IMG/VR virus record: IMGVR_UViG_3300032288_004964
Location: 124,001 to 188,000 of that record
DNA: 64,000 bases
Strand: one strand, 5' to 3'
In this document: positions 2,642-50,366 of the stretch, piece by piece
Numbering within the stretch: position 1 is the stretch's first letter
Layout of the letters: every line of letters begins with the position of its first letter
Translations under genes and position numbers: made by a program
Notes under the pieces: generated by a model
The model's database searches: none
What the model was told of the DNA's origin: nothing
The model's input: the letters and a program-made list of their open reading frames with translations, nothing else

Positions 2642-3451
2642 ATGAGATTAAAAGAATCATTAAAAGATTTAATAGTAAATTCCGTTTTATATACAATTAC
2701 TTTAATTAGAAGCCTTTTTGGTAAAATGGAAAAGAGTAACTCTAATATTACTTCTAAAATGGAGTTAATATTTGAGGATAATTTTCAATCATTTAATAAA
2801 GATGTTTGGAGAATTGGTCAACCTTGGGGTAAATTTCATCCAGGTTCTCCTTATCAATATTATGGAGATGAATCTGTTTTTATACAAAATGACTGTTTGG
2901 TATTAAATCAGATATATTCACCTAAACAATTAACTACTTGGGAAGATCCTAAAGTATATGATATACCTTACTCTGTTGGATTGATAACATCATATGAAAG
3001 TTATGGATATGGATTTTATGAATTTGAAGTAGAACTACCTTATGGTTCTGGATTATGGCCAGCAGTTTGGTTAAGTTGTGTTGATTCATGGCCTCCTGAA
3101 ATAGATATTATAGAAGCTTACTCTGATAATAAAGCTAATTATAAGAATAACTTACAATCAAATTTTCATTTCAATATGGAAGACAAAAAGGAGTCTTCTG
3201 GTGCTAGAAATCATCCAGTTAATGTTCCATATGATAAATTGAAATTGGGTTGCTGGTGGACTAAGGATTTCATTAAAATCTACTATAATGGACATCTAGT
3301 TAGACAAATTACATCTGATTATATTTTAAAATGGTTTAGAGATAAGAAAATGTTAATTATATTAAACAATGCTATTAGACCAGAATATACTAAGGATATA
3401 GAATCTCAAATTTCAGAATTTAGGATTTATAGTGTAAAAGTATGGAAGTAA
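2642..3451 (+). CDS. Glycoside hydrolase family 16 (laminarinase/beta-glucanase-like)
   Basis: GLWPAVW and WPPEIDIIE (ExDxxE catalytic motif); FEDNF and YGFYE segments. Confidence 0.85.
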   Translation: MRLKESLKDLIVNSVLYTITLIRSLFGKMEKSNSNITSKMELIFEDNFQSFNKDVWRIGQPWGKFHPGSPYQYYGDESVFIQNDCLVLNQIYSPKQLTTWEDPKVYDIPYSVGLITSYESYGYGFYEFEVELPYGSGLWPAVWLSCVDSWPPEIDIIEAYSDNKANYKNNLQSNFHFNMEDKKESSGARNHPVNVPYDKLKLGCWWTKDFIKIYYNGHLVRQITSDYILKWFRDKKMLIILNNAIRPEYTKDIESQISEFRIYSVKVWK

Positions 3452-3714
3452 TCATTGGAAGAAAATCAGATAGTTTGATTGAACAAGGTTATGTTTATGC
3501 TCCTTATATTCCAATTCAAACATCATCTGTTGTAAATGGATATGATTCTAAAAATACAAATAGAAAAAGAAAGATTAATAAGATATTTGGCTTAGGTTTA
3601 AATATTAAAGATGAATTCTTACCAAGTAAATCAATTACAAGTAGATACTCAACAAAGAATATAAATAGTAAATATTACGGAACTATAGAAATTAAAAACA
3701 CCACTCAAATTTGA
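3442..3714 (+). CDS. Small protein resembling the C-terminal segment of T4-like major capsid protein gp23, with an insertion
   Basis: GRK...EQGYVYAPYIP...F.P...ITSRY...YYG matches the gp23 C-terminal pattern GYKG..E.DAG.YYAPY...F.P....TRY (recalled from memory). Confidence 0.65.
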   Translation: MEVIIGRKSDSLIEQGYVYAPYIPIQTSSVVNGYDSKNTNRKRKINKIFGLGLNIKDEFLPSKSITSRYSTKNINSKYYGTIEIKNTTQI

Positions 3715-3725
3715 ATGGTGTTTTT
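3694..3725. terminator. Bidirectional intrinsic terminator
   Basis: AAAAACACCA-CTCAAATTTGAA-TGGTGTTTTT between convergent genes. Confidence 0.75.
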
Positions 3726-3744
3726 AATTTATTTCATATTTTAA

Positions 3745-4083
3745 TTATCTAATATATCCTGTTTTTTCTTCACCAGTTTTAAAGTTATAACAAGTTATTG
3801 AATCATGACCTGGTACAACAATAACATCACCAAATACAAATGGATTCATTATATCATATTCAAAAATAGCAACTTCAATTTTACCGTCTTTTACAATAAG
3901 TACAAACTCTCTACCTTCTTCATCAAATCCTTCTTTTAATTCAGAACCATCTGGTAATTTACTCAAATTTCTTCCAATTTCTATTTCACCTTCTATTTCA
4001 TCTGCTGTTAATGATCCTACTAATTTGAATCCTAAATCATCACCAGATTCCATGTCTTCGTTAAATTTTCTTAAGTGTTTCAT
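3745..4083 (-). CDS. Hypothetical protein with CTS-like N-terminus
   Basis: Starts MKHLRKFNED. Confidence 0.7.
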   Translation of the reverse strand: MKHLRKFNEDMESGDDLGFKLVGSLTADEIEGEIEIGRNLSKLPDGSELKEGFDEEGREFVLIVKDGKIEVAIFEYDIMNPFVFGDVIVVPGHDSITCYNFKTGEEKTGYIR

Positions 4084-4113
4084 ATTATTTTATTTTTTTT
4101 AAGTATTGAATCT

Positions 4114-4392
4114 TTATTTCAAATCACTAAGACTCATAATCATTTTTTTAGCTTTTTCGGAAAGACCATTTAAATATTGGTCAACATCTTGAATACTATT
4201 CACATCAGGATATCCATTTAAATCCATTTGCAAATTATCAAATGTAAACTCACCACTTAAACCTCCTTTTTTTAATCCATGTGCAAGTCCTCTATAATAA
4301 GCTTGTTCTATTAAATCGGAAATGTTTTTAATAGTTCTTTCTTCAGCTCTTACGAAGTTAATATCTTCATTGAATTTCTTTAAGTGTTTCAT
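4114..4392 (-). CDS. Hypothetical protein with CTS-like N-terminus
   Basis: Starts MKHLKKFNED. Confidence 0.7.
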   Translation of the reverse strand: MKHLKKFNEDINFVRAEERTIKNISDLIEQAYYRGLAHGLKKGGLSGEFTFDNLQMDLNGYPDVNSIQDVDQYLNGLSEKAKKMIMSLSDLK

Positions 4393-4409
4393 AATTTATA
4401 TTTTTTTTA

Positions 4410-4976
4410 CTAGAAATAAGTTTGTTCAAAGTAAAGAACTTCAAATTTATTCTCATGATTTACTAACATTATCGCATTTAATAAGTCAGAATATTCAGCA
4501 ACTGCATCATTTTGAATATTAACATATCCTTGAATAAAATTAAATGTAGCTGGATGAACATTAAGCGATGATTTTTGACCTTCTGAATATTTTCCAAAAA
4601 GACCATATTCCATTTCATAAGCTAAACCAACAATCTCAACTAAATTATTAAATGTTTTTGTAGTTGGAGCTTGTGGTATAACTGGAAGTAAGTTCCATTG
4701 TGTTAAATAATCTTGAAGACCTTTAGCATGTTCTAATTCTGAACTAGCTTCGGCTTCAAAGAAAGAAGCAGCTTTTTTATAGTTCATATTTTTACACCAG
4801 TTAGCAGCGTTTCTATAGAAATAGTGAGCAGTATATTCATCTCCAATTCTATCATTTAGCATTTTTTCAATTGCCTCTGGAAGTACATTAGGTTTAACTA
4901 CACCACCTTCCATTTTTGTTTCTTCTTCTTGTTGAACTTGTGCCTGAGCTTGTGTTCCGAATTTTTTAATTTCCAT
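4410..4976 (-). CDS. Ferritin (non-haem, FtnA-like)
   Basis: LNDRIGDEYTAHYFY...A.FF...ASSELEHA four-helix ferroxidase pattern; Q..AVAE helix. Confidence 0.8.
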   Translation of the reverse strand: MEIKKFGTQAQAQVQQEEETKMEGGVVKPNVLPEAIEKMLNDRIGDEYTAHYFYRNAANWCKNMNYKKAASFFEAEASSELEHAKGLQDYLTQWNLLPVIPQAPTTKTFNNLVEIVGLAYEMEYGLFGKYSEGQKSSLNVHPATFNFIQGYVNIQNDAVAEYSDLLNAIMLVNHENKFEVLYFEQTYF

Positions 4977-4987
4977 GTGTTTGTATT

Positions 4988-5518
4988 TTATTTATTGTAA
5001 GTCAATTTATAAATTGTTCTATAAAGTAAAGCAACAACTTCATCAATTAAATTATGTAGATGTGTGTCTTCTTGTTTAATACAAGTTCTTTCTGTTTTAA
5101 CAAACTCAACAACTTGTTTATAATATTCTAATTTATCAGTTGATTTAGTTTCCTTAGTATCAATTACATCATATTCTTCAATAAGACCGTACTGACCTTG
5201 ATAAGTTTCAACTATTTCATCAATGTGTTCAATTACACCAGTGTAATAAGCTTCTAATGCTAAGTGAGCGGCGTGTGAACCCATATCGCCTTTAACAGTC
5301 CAGTGATAAACTTGAGCCATCTCTCTACTTTCTAATAATTTGGAGATAAACTTAGAAACTGATCCAGCTTCTTTACTTTCTTCTTTTTTATCTTCTGCTT
5401 TCTCTTCCGCTTTTTCTTCAGAACCTTCTGGTAGATTTGCTTTTGGCATACCCGCCATCATATCTTGATCCTCATTTAACTTTTTTAGTGGTGTTTTAAA
5501 ATCTGAAAACTTTTTCAT
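4988..5518 (-). CDS. Dps/ferritin-like four-helix protein (phage type) with CTS-like N-terminus
   Basis: YHWTVKG...HLALEAYY...IDEIVE, a Dps-like HW...H...D...E pattern. Confidence 0.7.
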   Translation of the reverse strand: MKKFSDFKTPLKKLNEDQDMMAGMPKANLPEGSEEKAEEKAEDKKEESKEAGSVSKFISKLLESREMAQVYHWTVKGDMGSHAAHLALEAYYTGVIEHIDEIVETYQGQYGLIEEYDVIDTKETKSTDKLEYYKQVVEFVKTERTCIKQEDTHLHNLIDEVVALLYRTIYKLTYNK

Positions 5519-5562
5519 ATTGTTTATTATTTTTAATAGAGTATATATTATTTATTTAAAAT

Positions 5563-5602
5563 AAAAAATCCTCATAAGTATATATTAAAAACTTATGAGG
5601 AT
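5563..5602 (-). terminator. Intrinsic terminator with a late-promoter-like box in its loop
   Basis: 12-bp stem ATCCTCATAAGT/ACTTATGAGGAT followed by a U-tract on the minus strand. Confidence 0.65.
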
Positions 5603-5623
5603 ATATTTAATTAATGTAAAATA

Positions 5624-6106
5624 TTACATTTTTATTCCATTTAACCACTTATTAACTTGTTTTTCCGCCATATCACATATTTGTTCTTTGGTGAATCCCA
5701 TATGAGCCATTATATCGAATATCATTATTAAACAATCTGTGGATTCTAATAGAATATTATAGTTAATTCTACCTTCATCTTCTGTTGTTCTTTTATATCC
5801 TTTTAATTTAAGAATTTCTGCTGACAGTTCGCCATATTCTTCGCCTAATTTAAGACCTCTTTCAATTAAGCCATGTTTTTCATATTTAGAAGCGTTTATA
5901 ACTAAGTCATAAACATAATCAATTAATGTTTCAGAGATTATTTCTTCTTCTACTGGTTTTGACTTTCTTTCAAACTCTTCTATTAAGATTGTTAAAATTG
6001 AAACTTTATTAGACTCTTCTTTAGATAATTCTACTCCGTGAATAGACTCTAAATACTTTTGAGCCTGTTGATAATCATACTGATTTGTTATTGGTTTTAG
6101 TTCCAT
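5624..6106 (-). CDS. HigA-like N-terminal domain fused to MazG-like NTP pyrophosphohydrolase
   Basis: LKPITNQYDYQQA...ILTILIEEFE (HigA N-domain-like); KLGEEYGEL...ESTD (MazG EExxE...ExxD). Confidence 0.7.
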   Translation of the reverse strand: MELKPITNQYDYQQAQKYLESIHGVELSKEESNKVSILTILIEEFERKSKPVEEEIISETLIDYVYDLVINASKYEKHGLIERGLKLGEEYGELSAEILKLKGYKRTTEDEGRINYNILLESTDCLIMIFDIMAHMGFTKEQICDMAEKQVNKWLNGIKM

Positions 6107-6165
6107 AATTTGAAAATGTGAAAATTAAATTTAATATATACTATGTAAAAAATATAAGATTATAT

Positions 6166-6432
6166 ATGAAATATGTAAAAAAGTTTGAGTCATTTGTTTC
6201 TGAGAAGTTAGTTGCTACTCAACCAGCTCCTTCTAAACCAGAAGTTGCTCCTGATACAATTGAGAAGCCTGCAATGCCAGCTACTCCAACACCTATTAAA
6301 AGAGATAGAACATCTCCAGTTCCTGCTCCAGCAAAAATGGTAAAAGCAACTGCAATGGATGTTGCTGAAAGATTTATAGAACTTGTTAACAAATCAGGAG
6401 ATGATATTAAAAAATATACAGAGATAAAATGA
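6166..6432 (+). CDS. Pro-rich hypothetical protein with CTS-like N-terminus
   Basis: Start moved to ATG 6166 (MKYVKKFESFVSE), downstream of AATATATA at 6133-6140. Confidence 0.7.
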   Translation: MKYVKKFESFVSEKLVATQPAPSKPEVAPDTIEKPAMPATPTPIKRDRTSPVPAPAKMVKATAMDVAERFIELVNKSGDDIKKYTEIK

Positions 6433-7946
6433 AAAGCTTTGAACAATTTTTAAAAGAGGAAATTTCTATTAAAGGAAATAAAGGTATACCTTCTGATAAA
6501 ATTTCAGATATTGAAAGACAAGGTGCTGAAAAAATCAGAGGAGTTAACCCACAACAATTAATGGGTCAGATCATGGGATTTCTTAGACAATCTCAATCAT
6601 TTACAAGAGGTAAAGAAAAAGAATTAGAAAAACTTGCAAAAGAAGTTATTGAAGATGCTTTTGGATTAGTTCTTGCTAATGTGGATTTAGACATAAATAT
6701 GTTAAAAGATGGCAACAAAATTGCTGAATTCGCTAAGAAAGAAGATGAAGAGAAAAAAGAGGAAGAAGCTCAAGAAGAAGAGGAAGAAGAGGAAGAATCT
6801 CAAGAAGAACCTGAAAATGAAATTGACTTAGAAGCTCAACCATCAAGAGAAGAAATAAAATTAGCAGTAGATAAAAGAAAGATAATGAATAACATTATCC
6901 AAGGTGAAGCTAAAAACACAAAACATATTTTACACTCTGATAAATGTAAAGAAGGATTAGAAAGAATATATGGTGCTAAATGGAGAGAAATCTTTGATAT
7001 TTGGGACAATATGTCTAAAATAGCTGATAAGTTAGATTGGATTATTCCTATTCAACATAAAGCTAATATGATGGAAAATGCTCCAGGTGGTATGGCTGGT
7101 TGTGTTAGTTGTAGATTTCCTAAAAAGAAAAAGAAAACAAAAGACGAAGAAAAAACAGCTGAAGATATTATTAAATCATTAGAAGATGGTGAAGATATGA
7201 TGGATAAGCAAGAAGATATCAAAAAACTTTTAGGAGTAACTAAACCTACAATTAAAGCTAGAGGTATTGATTTCCCTATGTTATTACATGAAACTGTTAA
7301 AGGTATATATGAAATGATTGCTGATGTTGCAATGCCTAAGGGTAAGAAATTAGCAACAGAAGTTCACAGACAAACTTCTTCATTTGCTGATGAAGCTGAG
7401 GATTTCAGATATGGTCCTTACTTAGCACAAGATTTAACAGATTTTATTGCAAAGAACTCTAAAGTAGACAAATATCCAAATATTAAAGAATATGTATTCG
7501 GTAAATTAATTGATTCTAGTAGATGGTCTGATGAAGAATGTTTATTAAATCTTAAAAATGTATTTTTAGAAAGTCCTGAGGGTAGACAACTAATTGATAG
7601 CTTAATTGATGAGACTATTGAAGAATTAGATGAGTATAATAAACAAATGGCTGAATGGGAAGCTAAAAATAAAGATTATGAAGATTCTAAAAAGAATGAG
7701 CCAAGTATTGAAGAAGTTCCAGAGTGGTGGAAAGAAGAAGGTGATAAATCTGAAGAATCTGAAGAAGTAGATTATTCTAAAATGTCTCAAAGAGAAATTC
7801 AATCAATGATTGATGATGCTTTAGATTCCGGAGATTTTGAAGTAGTTAAAAAACTAAGTCAATATCTTAAAGAAGGAAAAGAAATCTATTTGAAAGAAAT
7901 AGAAAGAATTAATGAAAGTCATAAATTTCATACAAGAATAAAATAA
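6429..7946 (+). CDS. Acidic hypothetical protein with CTS-like N-terminus (candidate internal head protein)
   Basis: Starts MKSFEQFLKEE; poly-Glu tracts; contains LLHETVKG. Confidence 0.75.
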   Translation: MKSFEQFLKEEISIKGNKGIPSDKISDIERQGAEKIRGVNPQQLMGQIMGFLRQSQSFTRGKEKELEKLAKEVIEDAFGLVLANVDLDINMLKDGNKIAEFAKKEDEEKKEEEAQEEEEEEEESQEEPENEIDLEAQPSREEIKLAVDKRKIMNNIIQGEAKNTKHILHSDKCKEGLERIYGAKWREIFDIWDNMSKIADKLDWIIPIQHKANMMENAPGGMAGCVSCRFPKKKKKTKDEEKTAEDIIKSLEDGEDMMDKQEDIKKLLGVTKPTIKARGIDFPMLLHETVKGIYEMIADVAMPKGKKLATEVHRQTSSFADEAEDFRYGPYLAQDLTDFIAKNSKVDKYPNIKEYVFGKLIDSSRWSDEECLLNLKNVFLESPEGRQLIDSLIDETIEELDEYNKQMAEWEAKNKDYEDSKKNEPSIEEVPEWWKEEGDKSEESEEVDYSKMSQREIQSMIDDALDSGDFEVVKKLSQYLKEGKEIYLKEIERINESHKFHTRIK

Positions 7947-7952
7947 AAATAT

Positions 7953-9920
7953 ATGAAACTACATAAGTATAATCAATTTTTAGGTGAAAAGCCATTAAAT
8001 GAAAATCTTGATAAGGCTAAAAAGTTCTTAAAAGATAGATTTATTATATCTACAGCTGTTAAGGATTTAGATTTATTAAAAGGTGAGCTAGCTGCTCAAA
8101 TGGAACATGGTGAAAAAAGAACTTTAAGTTTAAAAGATTTTACACCAGAACAACAAGATGAACTTAGAAAAAAAATCAGAGAGATTAAACTTACTGATGA
8201 ACAGATAAGAAATATTGAAAGAGAACCTGATTTTGTTAAATTAAGAGAATTATTAAAAGATAATTTAGGTTATTTATATAACTTCACTTATATGTATTTT
8301 GTAGAAATGGTTTCTTTTGATGAGATTAAATCTATGTATGATAGAGTTCTTAGTTATGGTCAATTACTAGACAAACTTCCTAAGAAATTTGATGCTAACT
8401 TTATTGATCCAAATGTTCCAAACAATGCTGAAAAGTTAGTTGATGGTTTAGATACATTAGAAGATTATAAAAAGATTAAAAAAGTAGTTGATAAATTAAC
8501 TCCTGAACTTAAAAGAGATTATACAGCAGCTCCTGAAATGATTAAAGATGAATTTGCTCAAGTAGCAAGAGCATTTAATGATTTAGGTAAGAAAAGTGAT
8601 GGTACTATTGATGAGGTTGAAAGAGAAAAGTTATGGAAAACTTTCTTTGGTGAAGTTAGAATTATTGATTCTGATCAAGTAATTCACGGTAAAGCTTATA
8701 AGAAAGGTGATAAAAGGTATTTTGGTCCACTTTTTAGATATAAAAATATTAGAGAGTTTATTAAAGCCGCTCAAAATCACTTAAAAGCATCTGATAATAA
8801 AGATACTATCGCTTTCTATGATAAGATTAATAAATGTAATGAAAAGTTTGGATATTTAGGCGCTGATGTTATGTTTGATGAAGAAGGTATATTAATAATT
8901 GAAGTTAAATCATTCCCAGCTAATGTATTCTTAAACGGTCACACAAGACACTGTATTAAAGATTACATGAGTCAGTGGGATAATTATGTAGGTAATCATA
9001 ATAATAAACAATATTATATTTATAACTTTAATATTCCTCAATATAATAACTTATCTGTTATTGGTGTTACAATTGAACCAGCTCAAAGAATTAGAGCGGC
9101 TCACGCTAAAGATGATAGTAATGTAGCAGGAACAATTAAAAACATTCTAAAGAATTGGGAAAGTGAGTATAAAATAGATACTGATTTATTTACTAATGCT
9201 CTTAAATCAATGACTAAAGAAGAAATTGATAGAAGAGAAAGAGCTAAAGTAGCTGAAAGAGAAATTGTTAGAAAAGGATTAACAATTGAACAAATACTTA
9301 AATATGTAAAAGAAGACGGTGCTAATATTAATAAAGATAATGCTAAGGCACTTGAAAATGCAGTAGAAGAAGGTAATATAGAAAAAGTAAAGGTTTGCTT
9401 AGAATTGGGAGCTTCTCCTAACTTAAAACCTAAAGGACCAGATGCTATTATATCAAAAGCTAAAGGATTAGATATGATTAAATTATTAGTATCTCATGGT
9501 GCTGAATTAACTGGAGATGTATTCAATCAGGTTCTTAGTGATATGGAAGCTCTTGAATATTGCCTTAAAGCTGGATTGGATCCTAACTTTAGTGCATCAC
9601 TTCCTTTTAGAAAAGTTTGTAAAGGTTCTTGGAAAAACAAAGATGAAATTGGAGAAGGTTATTTTGAACCATTTAAAATGTTACTTAAATTTGGTGCTAA
9701 ATTAACTGATGATAGAGGTAGAAATATGATTATTAAATGGGCAGCTGAATATGGTAGGATAGATTTTATTAAGTATTTAGTAGAAAATGGTTTAGATAAA
9801 TCATTTACTGACGGTGACTGGAAAGAAGCTATTACTTGGATTAATCACGCAAGAAAAATGCCAGAGGCTACTAAGAATGAGGTTGTTAAATATTTACAAT
9901 CTAATATAAAAGAAAAATAA
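7953..9920 (+). CDS. Protein with C-terminal ankyrin repeats and CTS-like N-terminus
   Basis: GANIN..ALENAVEEGNIEKVKVCLELGASPN and WAAEYGRIDFIKYLVENG are ankyrin-like. Confidence 0.75.
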   Translation: MKLHKYNQFLGEKPLNENLDKAKKFLKDRFIISTAVKDLDLLKGELAAQMEHGEKRTLSLKDFTPEQQDELRKKIREIKLTDEQIRNIEREPDFVKLRELLKDNLGYLYNFTYMYFVEMVSFDEIKSMYDRVLSYGQLLDKLPKKFDANFIDPNVPNNAEKLVDGLDTLEDYKKIKKVVDKLTPELKRDYTAAPEMIKDEFAQVARAFNDLGKKSDGTIDEVEREKLWKTFFGEVRIIDSDQVIHGKAYKKGDKRYFGPLFRYKNIREFIKAAQNHLKASDNKDTIAFYDKINKCNEKFGYLGADVMFDEEGILIIEVKSFPANVFLNGHTRHCIKDYMSQWDNYVGNHNNKQYYIYNFNIPQYNNLSVIGVTIEPAQRIRAAHAKDDSNVAGTIKNILKNWESEYKIDTDLFTNALKSMTKEEIDRRERAKVAEREIVRKGLTIEQILKYVKEDGANINKDNAKALENAVEEGNIEKVKVCLELGASPNLKPKGPDAIISKAKGLDMIKLLVSHGAELTGDVFNQVLSDMEALEYCLKAGLDPNFSASLPFRKVCKGSWKNKDEIGEGYFEPFKMLLKFGAKLTDDRGRNMIIKWAAEYGRIDFIKYLVENGLDKSFTDGDWKEAITWINHARKMPEATKNEVVKYLQSNIKEK

Positions 9921-9921
9921 T

Positions 9922-9949
9922 AAAAAACCCACTCTAAAGTGGGTTTTTT
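9922..9949 (+). terminator. Intrinsic terminator
   Basis: AAAAAACCCACT-CTAA-AGTGGGTTTTTT. Confidence 0.8.
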
Positions 9950-9966
9950 ATTTGATATATACTTCA

Positions 9967-9974
9967 TATATTTG
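9967..9974 (+). promoter_or_regulatory. Bacteroidota-type -7 box TAnnTTTG
   Basis: TATATTTG 4 nt upstream of ATG 9979; same octamer found at five other gene starts. Confidence 0.55.
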
Positions 9975-9978
9975 TTAA

Positions 9979-10206
9979 ATGAAAACAGGTTCAAGGGATA
10001 TAAATGGTAATTGGGTTGATGAAACACCACAAGCCAAATTAAGAAATATGTTAGGCTCATTTTGGACTTTATCTGAAATTATAAATGATAATCCAGAAAT
10101 TTTAACAGATAAAGAAGGGTTAGAATTGATAAAACAACTAGCTAAAACTTGTGAAGATCATAAAGATATAATTACAAATCTAATTAGCGAAACATGCAAG
10201 AAATAA
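9979..10206 (+). CDS. Hypothetical protein
   Basis: 75-aa ORF with its own promoter-like box. Confidence 0.6.
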   Translation: MKTGSRDINGNWVDETPQAKLRNMLGSFWTLSEIINDNPEILTDKEGLELIKQLAKTCEDHKDIITNLISETCKK

Positions 10207-10253
10207 CTTGGGATATATACGGTAATCCTGTTCTTCTAGATATAGAAGAATAA

Positions 10254-20063: not shown

Positions 20064-20080
20064 TAAACTATATATTATTT

Positions 20081-20953: not shown

Positions 20954-21061
20954 TAATATGTTTATTTTTATGTTTTATATATCTAAATTATCATAGTTTA
21001 ATCAAAAAAAATTCCATGAGTAAAAGTTAAAAGGGAAAGTCCTTTTTATAATATATAACTT

Positions 21062-21892
21062 ATGAAATGGACAGACGAAGAAATTGAAATTTTAAAAAAC
21101 AACTATGAACAAGGTGCTAATTATCTGACTTCTTTATTAGAAAGAGATAGATCTTCTATACAACATAAATTAAATAGATTGAGACTCTTTGTATCTAAAG
21201 AAACAAAGTCAAAGATATCAAAAGTGAATTCATCTAAAAGAAAATTTGATGATTCATTTTATTCAGTTTGTGATATAACAAAAAATATTAATGAATACTC
21301 AGCTTATATTTTAGGATTCCTATGGACTGATGGATTTCTTCTGAAAAATAGAAAAACTACAGGTATTACAATTATTAAAGATGATATGATTGAGATAAAT
21401 TGGATATTTAACAAGTTTGGAACTTGGTATTCTCAAGATAGAGTTAGAAAGAATAAAAGAGAGTCTAGTACCTTAACCGCATATAATCCATATCTATTAG
21501 ATAGTTTAATTTCATATGACTTTGATAAAAAATCATATATATCTCCTGAAAAGTTATTTAGTTTAATACCACAAAAGTATTTAAAATATCTAATTAGAGG
21601 TATAATAGATGGTGATGGTTGCTTCTATCTGAATACAAAGAGATATACCTATCAATTAACTATTGCTTCTACATATGAACAGGATTGGTCATTTTATATA
21701 GACTTTTTTAATAAATTAGGATTTGAATTTAAAATACAAAAGAGAATAAATAAAAAAAGTAAATCTTCTATAATAAGATTATGTCAACGCCAAAAGATAT
21801 CTGATCTTTCTAAGTGGTTATATGATGGGTATGAGTTTGATAAAATTGGACTCTCAAGAAAATACAACAAATCTATTTTATTTGATAAATAA
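21062..21892 (+). CDS. Free-standing LAGLIDADG endonuclease
   Basis: AYILGFLWTDG and YLIRGIIDGDG; N-terminal WTDEE HTH-like segment. Confidence 0.85.
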   Translation: MKWTDEEIEILKNNYEQGANYLTSLLERDRSSIQHKLNRLRLFVSKETKSKISKVNSSKRKFDDSFYSVCDITKNINEYSAYILGFLWTDGFLLKNRKTTGITIIKDDMIEINWIFNKFGTWYSQDRVRKNKRESSTLTAYNPYLLDSLISYDFDKKSYISPEKLFSLIPQKYLKYLIRGIIDGDGCFYLNTKRYTYQLTIASTYEQDWSFYIDFFNKLGFEFKIQKRINKKSKSSIIRLCQRQKISDLSKWLYDGYEFDKIGLSRKYNKSILFDK

Positions 21893-21898
21893 TATCCT

Positions 21899-21906
21899 TA
21901 TATTTG
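21899..21906 (+). promoter_or_regulatory. Bacteroidota-type -7 box
   Basis: TATATTTG 4 nt before ATG 21911. Confidence 0.6.
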
Positions 21907-21910
21907 TAAT

Positions 21911-22516
21911 ATGAATATATGGTTTACATCAGACACACATTTTGGACACACTAACATTGCTGGTCCTAAAATTTCTAATTGGTCTTCAGGATACAGAAAC
22001 TTTAACTCTGTACATGAAATGAATATGACACTTGTTGATGGTATCAACAAATATGTTAAAGAAGATGATATACTTTATCATCTTGGTGATTGGAGCTTTG
22101 GAGGATCTCAAAATATATTTCAATTCAGAAATTATCTTATATGTAAGAATATACACTTGATTTTAGGCAACCATGATCAACATATAGTTGATAAAGAGAT
22201 AAACTATCATGATACATCATTTAATCCAGTTGAACTTTTCTCATCTGTTCAAGATGTTCTAACTTTAGATATTGGTAAAACAAAACTATTTTTATCACAT
22301 TATTCACATAGAGTTTGGTTGGGTAGTCATAAGGGTGTTATACATCTTTATGGCCACTCACACGGATCTATTCCCGATTATGGAAAATCTATGGATGTTG
22401 GTGTTGATGTTGCTTTTAAGAAGTTTGGAGAATATAGACCTTTTAATATTGGCGACATCACTAATATTATGTCAAAGAGAAGTATAGAGAAAATTGATCA
22501 CCACGGAGATATGTAG
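21911..22516 (+). CDS. Calcineurin-like metallophosphoesterase
   Basis: SDTH, LGD, GNHD, SHY, GHSH. Confidence 0.9.
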   Translation: MNIWFTSDTHFGHTNIAGPKISNWSSGYRNFNSVHEMNMTLVDGINKYVKEDDILYHLGDWSFGGSQNIFQFRNYLICKNIHLILGNHDQHIVDKEINYHDTSFNPVELFSSVQDVLTLDIGKTKLFLSHYSHRVWLGSHKGVIHLYGHSHGSIPDYGKSMDVGVDVAFKKFGEYRPFNIGDITNIMSKRSIEKIDHHGDM

Positions 22517-22517
22517 T

Positions 22518-22682
22518 ATGAGAAAATTAGAATCTGAATTATCCTATTATAAAGTTTTAATTAATTCTCAGTATGGTACAAATACCAGTACAACAATGTT
22601 AGATAAAGCCTATCAACTAAGAAGAAAAATTATCACTGTAAAAAATAGAAAAAATAAAATTAAAAAGATATTTAATATATGA
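22518..22682 (+). CDS. Small protein containing family-B DNA polymerase motif B plus R-tag
   Basis: KVLINSQYG (KxxxNSxYG); C-terminal NRKNKIKKIF; start moved to ATG 22518. Confidence 0.55.
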   Translation: MRKLESELSYYKVLINSQYGTNTSTTMLDKAYQLRRKIITVKNRKNKIKKIFNI

Positions 22683-23008
22683 TAGATAGATGGGATTGTC
22701 AAAGAGTTGTTTGTATAAAAGAATATAAAACTCTTAAAATAGGTAGTCATTATGATATTAAGGGTAGAGGTAATTTAGAATTTAATGCTGATAAAGAAGT
22801 TGGTGATAAAAGAGGATATGGATATTGTGTAGAAGATGGTCTCTATGGTTCCTACTCTGGTAAAAAAGATTGGTGGAAATTACCATATGCTGAGAAAGTT
22901 AAGTGGTATTATTTTACTGAGGAAGAAATGTCTGAATATTTTATAACAGAAGAAGAAGATTATAAAGTATATTTAAGAGACGAAAAACTAAAACAATTGC
23001 TTAATTAA
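22679..23008 (+). CDS. Hypothetical protein with C-terminal R-tag
   Basis: Ends LRDEKLKQLLN. Confidence 0.7.
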   Translation: MIDRWDCQRVVCIKEYKTLKIGSHYDIKGRGNLEFNADKEVGDKRGYGYCVEDGLYGSYSGKKDWWKLPYAEKVKWYYFTEEEMSEYFITEEEDYKVYLRDEKLKQLLN

Positions 23009-23009
23009 C

Positions 23010-23882
23010 ATGAAAGATATAAAAGGATTTTGTAAATTATTTGATTTAAGTATTCCCGAACATGATGAGTTTGATTATTATATCAATCAATTTGTTCGGT
23101 TAGAAAAGTTTAAACATATTAAAGATATGATTCCTCTCTATGAGAAAGCTGAAGAGGAATTTGGTGATATTTTTGCCTTAAAAATTGAAAAGTCTAATCA
23201 GATTGTTCAATTTTTACAATCAACTCGTGCCTTAAATGAGTTAAATGATGATAATTTAATACCTGATCTTCCTACTACAAAGAGCTTTCAATATTCAGAA
23301 GATAAAAAATATATCTCTATTGATATGAGAATGGCTAATTGGCAAGTTCTTAAAAAGTATGATCCTCACTTTGAGAATGAGTTAGGAGATAGTTATATTG
23401 AACTACTTAAAAAGTTTGATGTACCTGAGGTATTTTGGAATTCTAAGCAATTTAGACAATATATCTTTGGTAATATTAATCCTAAGCGACAAGGAAAAGC
23501 TCAAAGAGTAATGATTCAAGAAATACTTGATAAGTATAGTCATTTGAATTTAGAAGTAGCTTGTATTAAGAATGATGAGGTTATTTACTCATTTGACTCA
23601 TTTGATGATATTATTCAAATTATAAATGAAATAGATAGTAAAAGGTTTAAGATTAAACTTTTCACAGTAAAAAGAGTACAAGATTTTCGAATTAATTCTT
23701 ATATGGATGAAAGTGGAAACTTTCTATATAAAGAAATGATTGGATGTAACGGAAATTCATTCTTCTTATTACTTAAACAGTATATTTTTAATGAACCTTT
23801 AGACATAAGAGACCTTTATTTTAGGATGGATGGTAATTTAGCCATTTGGAAAGTAGATGGTCTAAAATTAGAACTAAAATGA
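23010..23882 (+). CDS. Hypothetical protein, possibly polymerase-palm-like
   Basis: ISIDMRMAN and IKNDE acidic motifs; functional call weak. Confidence 0.45.
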   Translation: MKDIKGFCKLFDLSIPEHDEFDYYINQFVRLEKFKHIKDMIPLYEKAEEEFGDIFALKIEKSNQIVQFLQSTRALNELNDDNLIPDLPTTKSFQYSEDKKYISIDMRMANWQVLKKYDPHFENELGDSYIELLKKFDVPEVFWNSKQFRQYIFGNINPKRQGKAQRVMIQEILDKYSHLNLEVACIKNDEVIYSFDSFDDIIQIINEIDSKRFKIKLFTVKRVQDFRINSYMDESGNFLYKEMIGCNGNSFFLLLKQYIFNEPLDIRDLYFRMDGNLAIWKVDGLKLELK

Positions 23883-24502
23883 TAGATATTTTTGATAAGA
23901 AACCGATTGATTTGGCAAATATTATTTGTCACTCTGGTGGTGCTGAAGGCTCAGATACTGCTTGGGAGAAAATTGGTGAAAAGTTTGGTGTTAAAACAAA
24001 AGCTTACTCATATAAAACTAAGGTACATACTTCACCAAACAAAGTAGAAATATCTGATGAAGATTATAAAGAAGGTATTTCTGAAGTCAATAAGGCAAAT
24101 AAGTTTTTGAATAGATATGGAATCCATAAATATATGAATCTCTTAGCACGTAACTGGGCACAAGTTAAATATTCTAAACAAATATTTGCAATAGGAACTA
24201 TTATTAAACCAGGTGAGAAGAATTCAAAGGGTTACTACAATAAAGGTAAGTATGATATAATTGATGGTGGTACTGGATACGCTGTTCAAATGGGTATTAA
24301 TAATGAAAGAGAAGTTTTTGTTTTTGATCAAGTAAGAGATAAATGGTTTAGATGGTCTTATTCTACTCTAAAATTTGTAGAGATTAAAGATATTCCTACT
24401 ATAACTAATAATGATTTTGCCGGTATAGGAACAAGAGAATTAGAACCAAACGGGTTGAAGGCAATTCGTGATGTATATGATAAATCCATAAAAAATAAAT
24501 AA
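23879..24502 (+). CDS. SLOG-superfamily (DprA/YpsA-like Rossmannoid) protein
   Basis: HSGGAEGSD...LLARN...GGTGYAV...VFVFDQ; start moved to ATG 23879. Confidence 0.65.
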   Translation: MIDIFDKKPIDLANIICHSGGAEGSDTAWEKIGEKFGVKTKAYSYKTKVHTSPNKVEISDEDYKEGISEVNKANKFLNRYGIHKYMNLLARNWAQVKYSKQIFAIGTIIKPGEKNSKGYYNKGKYDIIDGGTGYAVQMGINNEREVFVFDQVRDKWFRWSYSTLKFVEIKDIPTITNNDFAGIGTRELEPNGLKAIRDVYDKSIKNK

Positions 24503-24506
24503 TATA

Positions 24507-24977
24507 ATGACAAAGATGATTTTAACATCAGAAGGTAAAAAGAAGCTATTAGAAGAACTACACTTTTTATCAACAACAGAAAAAACAAGAATGATAAATG
24601 AACTTGCTGATGCTAGAGATAGAGGTGGTGTTTCTGAAAACTCAGAGTATGAAATTGCTAAAGATGAATATCAAAAACTACAAGTTAAAATAGTTAATTT
24701 AGAGGAAAAAATTGCCAATTCGGTTTTGATTAGCACTGCCGGTATTGATACTGAACAAGTTTCTGTTTTATCAACTGTAAAAGTTCTTAATAAGAAAACT
24801 AATACCGAAGTTAAATTCACAATAGTTACTGAAACAGAGATTGATATTAAAGCTGGTAAAATATCCTTAAATAGTCCTATTGCGGTTGGACTGTTAGGAA
24901 AAAAAGTAGGTGAAACTGCAAAAGTTGTTATCCCTGCTGGAACACTTGAGTTTGAAATTTTAGAAATAACTGCGTAA
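24507..24977 (+). CDS. greA: Transcription elongation factor GreA-like
   Basis: LT.EG..KL.EEL; ARDRGGVSENSEY; ISL.SPIA.GLLGKKVG...P.G. Confidence 0.9.
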   Translation: MTKMILTSEGKKKLLEELHFLSTTEKTRMINELADARDRGGVSENSEYEIAKDEYQKLQVKIVNLEEKIANSVLISTAGIDTEQVSVLSTVKVLNKKTNTEVKFTIVTETEIDIKAGKISLNSPIAVGLLGKKVGETAKVVIPAGTLEFEILEITA

Positions 24978-24978
24978 T

Positions 24979-25374
24979 ATGAAGATAAGTTTTGATTTTG
25001 ACGGAACACTAGATGATGAGTTTGATGGTGGATATAACATCTCAAAGGAAGAGATTCAATCACTTGCTAAAAAATATGTTGATGAAGGAAATGATGTTTG
25101 TATCATAACTAAAAGATATGACTCTAATAATAGACATATGGGTAAAGGAAATGAACACATTATTGTTTATGACTTAGCCAAAGAATTAGGAATTACTAAA
25201 ATTTATTTCACTAACAGAGAAATGAAGTTCTCACATATTCTAAATTTAGGAATTGAAATGCACTTTGAAAACTCTGAATATGAGGTTAGTTTGATAAATC
25301 TAGCTTGTAAACAGAAGGATCATAACTGTATAGTTGTTCACGTGGAAAACCCAAATTGGAGAGAATCTTTATGA
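24979..25374 (+). CDS. HAD-superfamily protein
   Basis: ISFDFDGTL. Confidence 0.7.
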   Translation: MKISFDFDGTLDDEFDGGYNISKEEIQSLAKKYVDEGNDVCIITKRYDSNNRHMGKGNEHIIVYDLAKELGITKIYFTNREMKFSHILNLGIEMHFENSEYEVSLINLACKQKDHNCIVVHVENPNWRESL

Positions 25375-26225
25375 AGATAATTAAAGCAAAATATTCTAAG
25401 GTAGATGTTACTGATATTATAAAACAAAAAGTTGTAAATGATAGACTTGTTATTAAAGTAGATAACAACATCTGTGGTGATCCTGAAGTTGGAGTTGTTA
25501 AGTCACTAACTATTGATTATGAATTAGAAGGTAAGTTGCTAACAAAATCATGTTTGGAAAACTCTATTTTGTCAATTCCTGATTCTAAATATGACAGACT
25601 TGGTATATTTTATTCTAATAATAACAATCCTGCAACTTATAAAACAATTAATGATTCTTTAGAGTCTATTAAAATTGCTAGTGAGGGAAAAGCTGATATT
25701 TTAACCTGTGTTTGGAATTCAATTCCAACAAATCCATTTATTCAAATAATTGCACAGACTAAAACATCATCACATCTAAATCAAGTTTTACAGATACTAC
25801 AATTACTATATACCGCTAGAAATATCAATCAGTATAAATATGTTTCCTTTTTAGAACATGATTGTTTATATCCTGTTGGTGTATTTGATTACCCTGACTT
25901 TGAAGAAGGATTAATATGTAATATGAATTATATCGGAGTTTGTAAAGGTGGTTGGCAAAAAAGAAATCAAGATGATAAACCTCTATCTCAAATTACTATG
26001 AAGTTTGATGATGCTATTAAACACTTTGAATCTATTTTACCCAATGCTATTTTAACAAACTCTGGATTAGTTGAACCTCAATTAAAAATCAAAGAATGGA
26101 GAAGTGAGAATTCATCGGTTCATGTTAATCACGGTCATCATTTTACATCACATTTTAGTATTTATAGTAAGAATAATTTAATTGAAGAACACTCTTATTG
26201 GGGAAGTTGGAGAAAATATTTATAA
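25371..26225 (+). CDS. Putative glycosyltransferase (GT-A-like) with N-terminal lectin-like domain
   Basis: AKY..DVT...GDP..GVVKSL.IDY N-domain; FLEHDCLY DxD-like motif. Confidence 0.55.
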   Translation: MKIIKAKYSKVDVTDIIKQKVVNDRLVIKVDNNICGDPEVGVVKSLTIDYELEGKLLTKSCLENSILSIPDSKYDRLGIFYSNNNNPATYKTINDSLESIKIASEGKADILTCVWNSIPTNPFIQIIAQTKTSSHLNQVLQILQLLYTARNINQYKYVSFLEHDCLYPVGVFDYPDFEEGLICNMNYIGVCKGGWQKRNQDDKPLSQITMKFDDAIKHFESILPNAILTNSGLVEPQLKIKEWRSENSSVHVNHGHHFTSHFSIYSKNNLIEEHSYWGSWRKYL

Positions 26226-26255
26226 ATAGTATCTTTGAATAATAATATATAATGT

Positions 26256-26732
26256 ATGATTAAATTCAGTCATATGATAAATGAAAGTGAAAGTTATAAA
26301 TTTAAATTAGGTTTAGATTTACATGGTGTTATTGATTCAATGCCTAAAGAATTTGCATTTCTAACAAATGCTATTGTTTCTGCTGGTGGTGAAGTACACA
26401 TATTAACAGGTGGTTCTTGGACACCTGAATTGGAAAACCAAGTAAAATCATATGGTATAAAATGGACTCACAGTTTTTCAGTTTATGACCATTTGATAAA
26501 AACTGCTAAAACTGTTGGTGAAATACAATTCCCGGATGGTACTATTCAAAAGAAATTTGAGAATGGTGTTTGGGATCATGTAAAAGCTGATTATTGTAGA
26601 GAGAACGGTATATCATTGCATATAGATGATACACTAATTTACAATGATTTCTTTACTACACCATTTGCTAGATTATGGACTCATACTAATACACCAAAGG
26701 GGTCACATAAAGATGTAAGACATTTAGATTAA
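26256..26732 (+). CDS. HAD-like protein with CTS-like N-terminus
   Basis: LGLDLHGVI...ILTG...K...HIDD; starts MIKFSHMINES. Confidence 0.65.
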   Translation: MIKFSHMINESESYKFKLGLDLHGVIDSMPKEFAFLTNAIVSAGGEVHILTGGSWTPELENQVKSYGIKWTHSFSVYDHLIKTAKTVGEIQFPDGTIQKKFENGVWDHVKADYCRENGISLHIDDTLIYNDFFTTPFARLWTHTNTPKGSHKDVRHLD

Positions 26733-26733
26733 T

Positions 26734-27210
26734 ATGATTAGTAGATGGTTTGATTTTGATCCGTTTGAAAGTAAGATGAAGAAGTCTGCGGGAGTTATTA
26801 TTATATTAAATGGACAAAAGGTTCTACTTTGTCATCCAACTAACTCAAGATGGTTTGGTACTTACTCATTTCCTAAAGGTGGACTAAATAAAGGAGAAAC
26901 AGAAATAGATGCTGCTATTAGAGAATTAAGAGAAGAATCATCAATTGTTATTGATAAATCTAAAATTACAAATCCAAATAGTCCTATTATTGTTGATTAT
27001 GTCAATAAAAAAGGTGAAAAAAAGTATAAACAACTTTATTTATATACAGTTTATATAAATGATATTTCTGAAATTGGATTAGATTCTGAAATAATTCCAA
27101 AAGAAAAACTACAACTATCCGAGATTGATTGGTGTGGATTTTTACCTAAACAAGAAGCCAAACATAGAATTTTCTATAGAGTTGTTCATCTGTTAGATAT
27201 GATAAACTAA
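26734..27210 (+). CDS. Nudix hydrolase
   Basis: PKGGLNKGETEIDAAIRELREES Nudix box. Confidence 0.88.
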   Translation: MISRWFDFDPFESKMKKSAGVIIILNGQKVLLCHPTNSRWFGTYSFPKGGLNKGETEIDAAIRELREESSIVIDKSKITNPNSPIIVDYVNKKGEKKYKQLYLYTVYINDISEIGLDSEIIPKEKLQLSEIDWCGFLPKQEAKHRIFYRVVHLLDMIN

Positions 27211-27246
27211 ATACTATTTTATAGTATAATAAATAAAAATATTATT

Positions 27247-27591
27247 ATGCTTGATAAAATTGAATTAGATTTAAATAATCCTATATTTGTCGCTTATGTT
27301 GATGTTAAAAATATGAGTAGACAATCGGCAGAAGAATATCTTATCAGAACTAAAGAAAATTTTGAAATTTACAAAAATATCACCGTTTGGACAATTGCTT
27401 CTGATCAAACTAAAATTGAATGTGTTTATGATGGTAAGTCCAAAATTAGAGAAAAAGAATTAAATGACTTAATAAAAGAAATAAATACAAGAATAGATAT
27501 AATGTCTCAATCACATTCTTTTGAAGATTTTAAGATAAATATCAGAGATTGGAGAATAAATAATATTATAGATGGCGATAACCAAAAATAA
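27247..27591 (+). CDS. Small protein with T4 portal (gp20)-like segment plus R-tag
   Basis: IFVAYVDVKNMSRQSAEEYL versus gp20 (V/I)(W/F)Y(V/I)D.GN(M/L)P..KAE.(Y/H); C-terminal IRDWRINNII. Confidence 0.55.
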   Translation: MLDKIELDLNNPIFVAYVDVKNMSRQSAEEYLIRTKENFEIYKNITVWTIASDQTKIECVYDGKSKIREKELNDLIKEINTRIDIMSQSHSFEDFKINIRDWRINNIIDGDNQK

Positions 27592-50365: not shown

Positions 50366-50366
50366 T

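What the first reader, a model, noticed from the sequence alone, without database searches (positions are those of the whole stretch)
3442..27591. Candidate decoy system: fragments of capsid, DNA polymerase and portal each fused to one short R-tag
Seen in sequence: three unlinked small ORFs each carry one conserved patch of a phage hallmark protein, a gp23-like C-terminal segment (3442-3714), PolB motif B (22518-22682) and a gp20 portal-like segment (27247-27591). Each also carries an R-x-x-[KR]-I-x-x-I tag (NRKRKINKIF, NRKNKIKKIF, IRDWRINNII). Established: portal and capsid proteins are triggers of bacterial pattern-recognition defences (Avs4 portal sensing; CapRel and Lit capsid sensing). 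Inference: these are bait-plus-tag mini-proteins that sponge immune sensors or deliver them to a common partner or protease, or that poison assembly of competing phages. Three independent fragment-plus-tag combinations argue against random pseudogene debris.
Basis: partly seen in the sequence, partly recalled or inferred. Interest (0 to 1): 0.92.

Follow-up and report, generated by a model that had tools for sequence, protein, structure and literature searches.

The report
Megaphage-wide C-terminal peptide tag
The 'R-tag' is real: about one in ten proteins of this giant-phage lineage carry this short helical peptide near their C-terminus, and one tagged mini-protein is a conserved copy of the end of a capsid protein. 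The polymerase and portal resemblances and the proposed decoy function remain unproven.

Summary
The three ORFs exist and are real genes under purifying selection (dN/dS 0.18-0.35).

- **ORF1 (3442-3714):** a genuine copy of the last ~65 residues of a gp23-type major capsid protein, with the tag inserted between two capsid blocks. It has 261 size-conserved relatives, and all 120 listed relatives keep the tag.
- **ORF2:** its 'PolB motif B' is only a 9-residue pattern with no statistical support.
- **ORF3:** no portal similarity by profile, pairwise or fold search.

**The tag** is far beyond chance, but it is not specific to hallmark fragments. In the complete 634-kb relative LR745206, the motif [IL]-R-[DENK]-x-K-[IL]-x-x-[ILV]-[LIF] lies within 12 residues of the stop codon in 100 of 942 genes (0.5 expected). 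These proteins are unrelated and have no known domains. Sampled stretches of a second megaphage give about 12%. Codon analysis shows a peptide-level signal, not an RNA-level one.

**A subclass,** RKxKIxxIF, sits on 40-90 aa mini-ORFs. Several of these copy pieces of the capsid protein, the prohead protease/scaffold and PolB motif A.

**Best reading:** a lineage-specific helical docking peptide that links many accessory proteins to one unknown partner. ORF1 and ORF2 belong to the mini-protein subclass. A decoy or poison function is possible but untested.

The parts
3442..3714 (+). ORF1, 90 aa: a capsid-C-terminus mini-protein with the architecture block A, tag helix, block B.
   Evidence: Pfam Gp23 303-376/376. 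tblastn to capsid-protein C-termini. Alignment. 261 relatives of 84-103 aa. dN/dS 0.18 and 0.35.
3487..3513 (+). ORF1 block A (GYVYAPYIP), matching a conserved strand region near the C-terminus of gp23-type capsid proteins.
   Evidence: Columns G16, Y17, P21 and Y22 are invariant or nearly so in alignment A1.
3562..3588 (+). ORF1 tag RKRKINKIF (K/F subclass). It lies in a ~22-aa insertion relative to real capsid proteins and is predicted to be a helix.
   Evidence: Six-frame scan. Present in 120 of 120 listed relatives. AF2 helix 37-49 with block pLDDT ~90.
3640..3681 (+). ORF1 block B (SRYSTKNINSKYYG), matching the TRYAKKM..FYG block at the end of gp23-type capsid proteins.
   Evidence: R68 is invariant; S67, Y69 and Y79 are nearly invariant.
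22518..22682 (+). ORF2, 54 aa (62 aa from the TTG at 22494): a conserved mini-protein with a K-x3-NS-x-YG pattern and a C-terminal tag.
   Evidence: 7 relatives of 48-60 aa. Alignment. Conserved position between the metallophosphatase gene and the 109-aa gene. dN/dS 0.24.
22551..22577 (+). ORF2 KVLINSQYG pattern. It resembles PolB motif B and also capsid block B; its origin is unresolved.
   Evidence: Pattern match only. No significant match to the polymerase or to the ORF1 family.
22647..22673 (+). ORF2 tag RKNKIKKIF (K/F subclass), 2 residues from the stop codon.
22679..23008 (+). 109-aa gene of unknown function carrying the D/L-subclass motif RDEKLKQLL at 22976-23002, one residue from the stop codon.
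   Evidence: The ortholog in the relative ends RDRKINSII. dN/dS 0.16.
27247..27591 (+). ORF3, 114 aa: a conserved small protein of unknown function with no portal similarity.
   Evidence: 372 relatives. dN/dS 0.20-0.23. No profile or fold hits to a portal.
27544..27570 (+). ORF3 motif RDWRINNII (D subclass), always 6 residues from the stop codon in relatives.
   Evidence: R100, D101, W102 and R103 are invariant in alignment A3.

Best explanation
The 'R-tag' is a lineage-specific peptide signal of about 10 residues: [IL]-R-[DENK]-x-K-[IL]-x-x-[ILV]-[LIF]. It is normally followed by 0-6 residues and the stop codon. It forms a short alpha-helix whose conserved residues (positions 0, 3, 4, 7, 8) lie on one face. 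This megaphage clade attaches it to roughly a tenth of its proteins. Nearly all of these are small, mutually unrelated accessory proteins without known domains.

The most likely function is docking: the helix plugs many different client proteins into one common partner. The partner has not been identified. Candidates are a sliding clamp, the procapsid or scaffold (as a packaging signal), an unfoldase or protease, or the membrane.

The window holds four clients: ORF1, ORF2, gene 22679-23008 and ORF3. ORF1 and ORF2 carry the basic/aromatic variant RKxKIxxIF, which is confined to mini-proteins of 40-90 aa.

Some members of that subclass are built from short pieces copied from core proteins. ORF1 is the clear case. 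It consists of the two conserved C-terminal blocks of a gp23-type capsid protein, with the tag helix inserted between them, and it has no fold of its own. Such a protein would most plausibly act by occupying a site that normally binds that capsid segment while being held at the hub by the tag.

Shown: the motif, its position, its peptide-level selection, its proteome-wide spread, the two subclasses, the capsid origin of ORF1, and purifying selection. Inferred: docking as the function, and competitive mimicry by ORF1.
For: **Beyond chance, and positional**
- LR745206 has 100 C-terminal hits in 942 genes, against 18 elsewhere (about 50-fold per residue). The shuffle mean is 0.48 and the maximum 3.
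- Sampled stretches of LR756502 give 13 of 111 and 8 of 65 genes.
- The window gives 3 C-terminal hits plus 1 internal, against 0.01 expected.

**On unrelated proteins**
- 96 N-terminal parts fall into 95 BLAST clusters.
- None of the 20 largest tagged proteins has a Pfam domain.

**Peptide-level, not RNA or DNA**
- Synonymous codon usage at conserved positions matches the genome-wide usage.
- 36% of tagged genes lack a close co-directional downstream gene, and spacing to the next start codon varies.
- Wobble positions vary between tag copies.
- No DNA is conserved beyond the tag.

**Helix**
- AF2 models ORF1 residues 37-49 as a helix with block pLDDT ~90, and the rest as coil.
- ORF3's motif lies in the last predicted helix, in a low-confidence model.

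**Two subclasses**
- K/R at position 1 is coupled to F/W/Y at position 8 (Fisher p 3.5e-9).
- Median length is 52 aa for that subclass against 105 aa for the other (p 5e-7).

**Clade-specific**
- Only 9 of 1082 genes carry it in more distant loci.

**ORF1**
- Capsid origin.
- Tag kept in 120 of 120 listed relatives.
- dN/dS 0.18-0.35.
- The clade's own capsid proteins are full-length and untagged, so ORF1 is not a detached piece of a split gene.

**Other core-protein fragments in the K/F subclass**
-.
Against: - No partner protein was found, and no interaction could be modelled or tested.
- The docking role is inferred from the pattern of conservation only.
- In ORF1 the tag is internal (41 residues from the end), unlike nearly all other instances. 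The ORF1-family tag may therefore act differently.
- The ORF3 structure model is of low confidence.
- Only 3 of 19 K/F mini-ORFs in the relative have statistically robust parent genes. Weak 'parent' hits (E 0.004-0.03) also appear in the D/L-subclass control, so enrichment of core-protein fragments is suggestive rather than proven.
- No transcript data could be found.
- Gene sets were called by a simple longest-ORF rule, not by a trained gene finder.
Confidence: 0.55

Rival explanations
1. One reading: dedicated bait-plus-tag decoys. Fragments of hallmark proteins sponge host pattern-recognition defences (Avs-, CapRel- or Lit-type sensors), and the tag hands the captured sensor to a common partner or protease.
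For: - Tagged mini-ORFs carrying pieces of the capsid protein, the prohead protease/scaffold and PolB motif A exist in the clade.
- ORF1 is strongly conserved.
- Avs-type sensors are reported to recognise capsid proteins and DNA polymerases (paper 10.64898/2026.01.04.697583).
- ORF1 has no fold of its own, as expected of a binding epitope.
Against: - Most tagged proteins (about 88%) are not hallmark fragments.
- ORF3 is not portal-like, and ORF2's polymerase origin is unsupported.
- The paper cited reports that sensors recognise conserved core folds, and a 65-residue unfolded piece may not present such a surface.
- No sensor, protease or anti-defence homology was found.
Confidence: 0.15
2. Inter-phage weapon: tagged mini-proteins are dominant-negative pieces that poison capsid assembly or replication of competing phages in the same cell.
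For: - The ORF1-family profile scores canonical T4-type capsid C-termini at 28-62 bits, but the clade's own 80 capsid proteins at 17 bits or less. ORF1 thus resembles capsid proteins of another lineage more than its own.
- The syntenic mini-ORF in LR756502 instead resembles the clade's own capsid protein. This suggests the fragment is exchangeable.
Against: - The high-scoring comparison set was chosen from ORF1's own search hits, which biases the contrast.
- No evidence of co-infecting T4-type phages.
- No assembly data.
- The relatives' versions resembling their own capsid protein would risk self-poisoning.
Confidence: 0.12
3. Packaging signal: the tag (or the capsid/scaffold-like fragment) targets small proteins into the procapsid, to be ejected with the DNA. 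This would be analogous to the T4 capsid-targeting sequence or to encapsulin cargo-loading peptides.
For: - The robust parents of K/F mini-ORFs are head-assembly proteins: the capsid protein and the prohead protease/scaffold repeats.
- The clients are small ORFan proteins, typical of ejected or early effectors.
- The signal is terminal and peptide-level.
Against: - About 100 different packaged proteins would be very many.
- The PolB-motif-A mini-ORF does not fit.
- There is no sequence similarity to known targeting peptides (from my own knowledge; not tested here).
- No virion proteome exists for this clade.
Confidence: 0.1
4. Nucleic-acid-level signal: the 'tag' is the translation of a conserved RNA or DNA element at gene ends, such as an initiation region for the next gene, a terminator or a recombination site.
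For: - The motif is A-rich and lies at gene ends, often 26-32 nt before the next start codon.
- Some mini-ORFs end inside terminator hairpins.
Against: - Conservation is codon-periodic with fully variable x positions.
- Synonymous codons follow genome-wide usage.
- 36% of tagged genes have no close downstream gene.
- The downstream start codon falls in two different frames, about equally often.
- No DNA is conserved outside the tag.
Confidence: 0.03
5. Debris or chance: the ORFs are pseudogene remnants and the tag is a composition artefact of a K/R/I-rich, AT-rich genome.
For: - The genome is 28% GC, which favours K, N and I codons.
- ORF2 and ORF3 have no family hits.
Against: - Shuffles give 0.000 strict tags in the window against 2 observed, and 0.48 against 100 in the relative.
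- dN/dS is 0.18-0.35.
- There are hundreds of size-conserved relatives.
- Positions are syntenic across phages whose neighbouring proteins are only 33-55% identical.
Confidence: 0.02

Closest known systems
Hub-binding short linear motifs at protein C-termini (PCNA PIP-box Q-x-x-[ILM]-x-x-[FY]-[FY]; bacterial beta-clamp motif; T4 gp45-binding tails)
   Same: - A short peptide near the extreme C-terminus, shared by many unrelated proteins, that docks on one hub.
- The spacing of hydrophobic positions (4, 7, 8) matches the PIP-box spacing.
- Basic flanks are common in both.
- Reviews were found (PMC6881253, PMC11139829). The spacing comparison rests on my own knowledge.
   Different: - No glutamine at position 1.
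- An invariant arginine and lysine that PIP-boxes lack.
- About 100 clients in one phage.
- The relative's own polymerase C-part ends in a different tail.
- Clamp binding was not tested.
T4 capsid-targeting sequence and encapsulin cargo-loading peptides
   Same: Short terminal peptides that route unrelated proteins into an HK97-fold shell. The robust parents of the tagged mini-ORFs are head-assembly proteins.
   Different: - The T4 signal is N-terminal and is cleaved.
- Encapsulin peptides have a different consensus (my own knowledge).
- No virion data exist for this clade.
MinD/FtsA-type C-terminal membrane-targeting amphipathic helix
   Same: A short basic-plus-hydrophobic C-terminal helix. 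One relative's tag ends KIKNIFGG, reminiscent of the MinD tail (my own knowledge).
   Different: - The invariant arginine sits in the middle of the hydrophobic face (my own helical-wheel inference).
- The majority subclass has an acidic residue at position 1.
gp23-type major capsid protein (Pfam PF07068)
   Same: ORF1 is collinear with the last ~65 residues, with conserved blocks A and B.
   Different: - Only about 12% of the protein is represented.
- It carries a 22-aa helical insertion.
- It has no independent fold.
- It is a separate gene, alongside an intact capsid gene in the clade.
Split or fragmented core genes of T4-like phages (for example a two-part gp43 polymerase)
   Same: The relative has a two-part family-B polymerase, so detached functional pieces of core genes do occur in this clade.
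   Different: The mini-ORFs duplicate segments that are also present in the intact or two-part gene. They are extra copies, not the missing piece.

Membership tests
gp23 major capsid protein family (PF07068), for ORF1 | Profile match above the curated threshold | tested here: inconclusive
   23.9 bits against a cut-off of 24.4, E 3.4e-5, covering profile positions 303-376 only. Two relatives carry a precomputed PF07068 hit. Full-length capsid proteins are recovered at their C-termini.
gp23 major capsid protein family (PF07068), for ORF1 | Complete HK97-type capsid fold able to form capsomers | tested here: not met
   Only 90 aa. AF2 predicts one helix (the tag) and otherwise coil. No structural match. 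ORF1 is a fragment homolog, not a capsid protein.
Family-B DNA polymerase, for ORF2 | Motif B pattern K-x3-N-S-x-Y-G | tested here: met
   KVLINSQYG at 22551-22577. The same pattern also fits capsid block B of the relative's mini-ORF.
Family-B DNA polymerase, for ORF2 | Significant profile or pairwise similarity to a polymerase around motif B | tested here: not met
   No Pfam, PHROG or tblastn hit. The family HMM does not hit the relative's polymerase. BLASTP gives E 6.5 and does not align at motif B.
gp20-type portal protein, for ORF3 | Profile or pairwise similarity to a portal protein | tested here: not met
   No portal family in Pfam, PHROGs or NCBIfam. tblastn hits only orthologs. The family HMM hits only the ortholog among the 942 genes of the relative.
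gp20-type portal protein, for ORF3 | Portal-like fold | tested here: inconclusive
   The AF2 model has pLDDT 57. Foldseek against PDB and BFVD gives a best E of 0.035 and no portal. The model is too weak to exclude remote similarity.
Clade-wide C-terminal motif [IL]-R-[DENK]-x-K-[IL]-x-x-[ILV]-[LIF] (defined here) | Match to the motif profile, within ~12 residues of the stop codon | tested here: met
   ORF2, gene 22679-23008 and ORF3 meet both criteria. ORF1 matches the profile, but 41 residues from the end.
PIP-box / clamp-binding motif | Q at position 1 and aromatic residues at positions 7-8 | tested here: not met
   Position 1 is D, E, N or K. Position 7 is I, L or V. Position 8 is L, I or F (logo). 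Only the spacing agrees.
PIP-box / clamp-binding motif | Binds a sliding clamp | not testable with these tools
Phage anti-defence decoy | Binds or neutralises a host immune sensor | not testable with these tools
   No sensor was identified. It needs co-expression or binding experiments.

The most novel reading that the evidence does not exclude
A giant-phage lineage has evolved its own peptide 'address label' that routes about a tenth of its proteome to a single hub. On top of it sits a modular class of tagged mini-proteins, made by copying short conserved segments of core virion and replication proteins: capsid C-terminus, capsid spine region, scaffold repeats and polymerase motifs. The copied segments sometimes resemble another phage lineage more than the phage's own proteins. 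These mini-proteins would act as tethered mimics that neutralise host sensors or sabotage rival phages.
Probability: 0.2. Interest if true: 0.9.

Novelty: new variant of a known kind. Interest (0 to 1): 0.75.

Why it matters
Most genes of huge phages are unannotatable. A single peptide signal shared by about 10% of the proteome would give an experimental handle on roughly a hundred dark-matter proteins at once, because finding the tag's partner shows where all of them go.

Terminal docking or targeting peptides are a known kind of device. My searches of the held literature found no description of a lineage-specific one on this scale in a phage.

The conserved capsid-fragment mini-protein family (261 relatives by word-index search; 133 representative clusters by exhaustive search) is a concrete candidate for protein mimicry of a core virion component. 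That bears on how phages evade capsid-sensing immunity or compete with each other.

Tried and rejected
- **Stop-codon recoding or a split capsid gene as the source of the small ORFs.** Rejected. The window is densely coding under the standard code. ORF1 is in a different frame from its upstream gene. The clade's 80 capsid genes are full-length and untagged.
- **Tagged fragments as exons of an in-situ fragmented polymerase.** Rejected. The neighbours of the motif-A mini-ORF are unrelated genes.
- **A mobile DNA cassette carrying the tag.** Rejected. No DNA is conserved outside the 27 nt of the tag.
- **An initiation-region or terminator artefact.** Rejected on codon usage and spacing.
- **One large paralogous family.** Rejected. 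There are 95 BLAST clusters among 96 N-terminal parts.
- **Functional theme from domains.** None of the 20 largest tagged proteins has a Pfam hit.
- **Structure and solved-structure searches for ORF1, and fold searches for ORF3.** Nothing significant.
- **NCBIfam and the protein atlas.** Nothing informative. The JGI name 'antirestriction protein' on two ORF3 relatives found no support.
- **RNA runs.** None was listed.
- I rebuilt the alignment from permitted database proteins only.
- **Weak 'parent' hits at E 0.004-0.03.** Discounted after a control set gave similar values.

Full report
**What the window is.** The window is AT-rich (26-33% GC) and densely coding under the standard code. It carries phage-type genes: a tail-fibre chaperone domain, GH16, ferritin-like, RecA-like, NUDIX, collagen-repeat and Laminin_G_3 proteins, and two ORFs of about 1,700 aa. 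Its nearest annotated relatives are two uncultured 'huge phages', LR745206 (634,780 bp) and LR756502 (642,428 bp). It is identical to part of a 385-kb IMG/VR contig. No full-length capsid, portal or polymerase gene is detectable in the window.

**The three ORFs.** All exist as described.
- **ORF1 (3442-3714, 90 aa).** It matches Pfam Gp23 at profile positions 303-376 of 376 (E 3.4e-5, 23.9 bits against a 24.4 cut-off). By tblastn it matches the extreme C-termini of annotated major capsid proteins of Microcystis, Flavobacterium, Bacillus, Listeria and Streptococcus phages. The alignment shows two collinear blocks, GYVYAPYIP and SRYS.K.INSKYYG. They are separated by a ~22-residue insertion, absent from real capsid proteins, that holds the tag.
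- **ORF2 (22518-22682).** It has no Pfam, PHROG or tblastn hit.
- **ORF3 (27247-27591).** It hits only orthologs in the two megaphages and no portal family.

**The tag is real, and larger than the finding.**
- Strict RK.KI..I[FW] occurs exactly twice in the six-frame translation of the window, in ORF1 and ORF2.
- The syntenic small ORFs of the relatives carry the same motif.
- I assembled LR745206 from 13 pieces. The strict motif occurs 10 times there, always in stop-to-stop segments of 36-79 aa and within a few residues of the stop codon.
- The motif was then broadened to R-[KRDENQS]-x-[KR]-[IL]-x-x-[ILV]-[LIFWY]. It lies within 12 residues of the stop codon in 100 of 942 called genes and occurs only 18 times elsewhere, about 50-fold per residue. 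Within-protein shuffles give a mean of 0.48 and a maximum of 3.
- Two 50-kb samples of LR756502 give 13 of 111 and 8 of 65 genes.
- The motif is rare in more distant loci (9 of 1082 genes). It is also rare around the clade's capsid genes (3 of 502).
- In the window, a profile built from the 100 instances picks out exactly four ORFs: ORF2, gene 22679-23008, ORF3 and, internally, ORF1. There is a clean gap to the next hit (E 0.02 to 1.2).

**Nature of the signal.**
- The N-terminal parts of the tagged proteins are unrelated: 95 BLAST clusters among 96.
- None of the 20 largest has a Pfam domain.
- Synonymous codon usage at the conserved positions matches genome-wide usage. A third of tagged genes have no close co-directional downstream gene. 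The distance and frame to the next start codon vary.
- Wobble positions differ between copies, and no DNA is conserved beyond the tag.
- The signal is therefore selected at the peptide level.
- AF2 models ORF1's tag as the only confident element: helix 37-49 with block pLDDT about 90. ORF3's motif lies in the last helix of a low-confidence model.
- The conserved positions 0, 3, 4, 7 and 8 fall on one helical face. This is my own geometric inference, and it is the pattern expected of a docking helix.

**Two subclasses.** K/R at position 1 is coupled to F/W/Y at position 8 (10, 2, 4 and 84 in the 2x2 table; p 3.5e-9). That subclass sits on much shorter ORFs, with a median of 52 aa against 105 aa (p 5e-7). 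ORF1 and ORF2 belong to it. ORF3 and gene 22679-23008 belong to the majority R-[DEN]-x-K-I-x-x-I-L subclass.

**Core-protein fragments.** These were found in LR745206:
- The syntenic 75-aa mini-ORF matches the genome's own capsid protein (E 2.9e-5) and the ORF1-family HMM (E 3e-11).
- An 83-aa mini-ORF consists of 3-4 copies of the 14-residue repeat of the gp21-like prohead protease/scaffold gene next to the capsid gene (E 4e-17).
- A 79-aa mini-ORF carries polymerase motif A, with 11 of 17 residues identical to the real N-part (E 7e-6).
- A fourth matches a mid-capsid segment only weakly (E 0.006).

Weak hits of similar E-value also appear in a control set from the other subclass, so only the first two or three cases are robust.

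The relative's polymerase is itself split into two distant genes. ORF2's KVLINSQYG fits motif B as a pattern. However, it shows no significant similarity to that polymerase or to the ORF1 family, so its origin is unresolved.

**The ORFs are genes.**
- ORF1 has 261 relatives. The 120 listed are 78-123 aa long (most 84-90) and 69-99% identical, and all 120 keep the tag.
- The exhaustive search finds 133 representative clusters: 117 short proteins and 16 longer ones, among them full-length capsid proteins hit at their C-termini. The commonest tagged architecture among the short ones is block A, tag, block B. There are also permuted and doubly tagged forms, and none of the capsid proteins is tagged.
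- dN/dS is 0.18 and 0.35 for ORF1, 0.24 for ORF2 and 0.20-0.23 for ORF3, like their neighbours.
- Positions are syntenic.
- The clade's 80 capsid genes are full-length, so ORF1 is an extra copy and not a detached exon.
- The ORF1-family profile scores canonical T4-type capsid C-termini at 28-62 bits, against 17 bits or less for the clade's own capsid proteins. The comparison set is biased, because it was drawn from ORF1's own hits.

**Interpretation.**
- *Best supported (confidence 0.55):* a lineage-specific helical docking peptide that ties many accessory proteins to one unidentified partner. The window holds four such clients. ORF1 is an exapted capsid fragment that probably acts as a tethered mimic.
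- *Disfavoured:* a nucleic-acid-level signal.
- *Unsupported:* the portal claim for ORF3.

I found no prior description of the motif or of tagged capsid-fragment mini-proteins in the held literature. That library does not cover subscription journals.

Noticed in passing
window 2642-3451: The GH16 glycoside-hydrolase gene directly upstream of ORF1 (10-nt overlap) is absent from several relatives. There, a tagged mini-ORF of 46-81 aa ending KIRKDKIKRLFNVNR occupies that position instead.
   Followed up: partly
L095:36803-38341 (+) and L093:32571-33992 (-), i.e. LR745206 232803-234344 and 130568-131992: The relative's family-B DNA polymerase is split into two genes about 100 kb apart on opposite strands. 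The exonuclease domain and motif A are in one, and motifs B and C in the other.
   Followed up: partly
L095:2546-4666 (LR745206 198546-200669): A 707-aa gene next to the capsid gene has a weak gp21-type prohead-protease match and a long array of 14-residue repeats (YSEYLAENLDKNI-like), probably a protease-scaffold fusion.
   Followed up: partly
LR745206 255013-255237, 189488-189646, 261397-261504 (loci L096, L094): Several K/F-tagged mini-ORFs end inside a GC-rich hairpin followed by a T-run, so the stop codon lies within an intrinsic-terminator-like structure.
   Followed up: no
window 21062-21892: A 276-aa ORF with a weak LAGLIDADG_3 homing-endonuclease-like match (E 8.5e-4, below the cut-off), two genes upstream of ORF2.
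   Followed up: no
window 4410-5518: Adjacent ferritin-like and DUF5856 genes on the minus strand. The ferritin-like gene is widespread in IMG/VR viral contigs (91 loci confirmed).
   Followed up: no
window 24507-24977: The 156-aa gene corresponds to a gene with precomputed GreA/GreB transcription-factor Pfam hits in a syntenic relative contig.
   Followed up: no
proteins P0293, P0299, P0272 (ORF1-family relatives): Circularly permuted (block B, block A, tag) and doubly tagged versions of the capsid-fragment mini-protein exist. This suggests tandem duplication and re-framing of the unit.
   Followed up: partly
proteins P0179, P0213 (ORF3 relatives): JGI names two ORF3 relatives 'antirestriction protein'. 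No Pfam or NCBIfam support was found. Many relatives have a ~30-aa N-terminal extension beginning MPLPFFNN.
   Followed up: partly
window 48077-52847: Consecutive large genes with collagen triple-helix repeats and three Laminin_G_3 (concanavalin-like) stretches, probably fibre or receptor-binding proteins.
   Followed up: no
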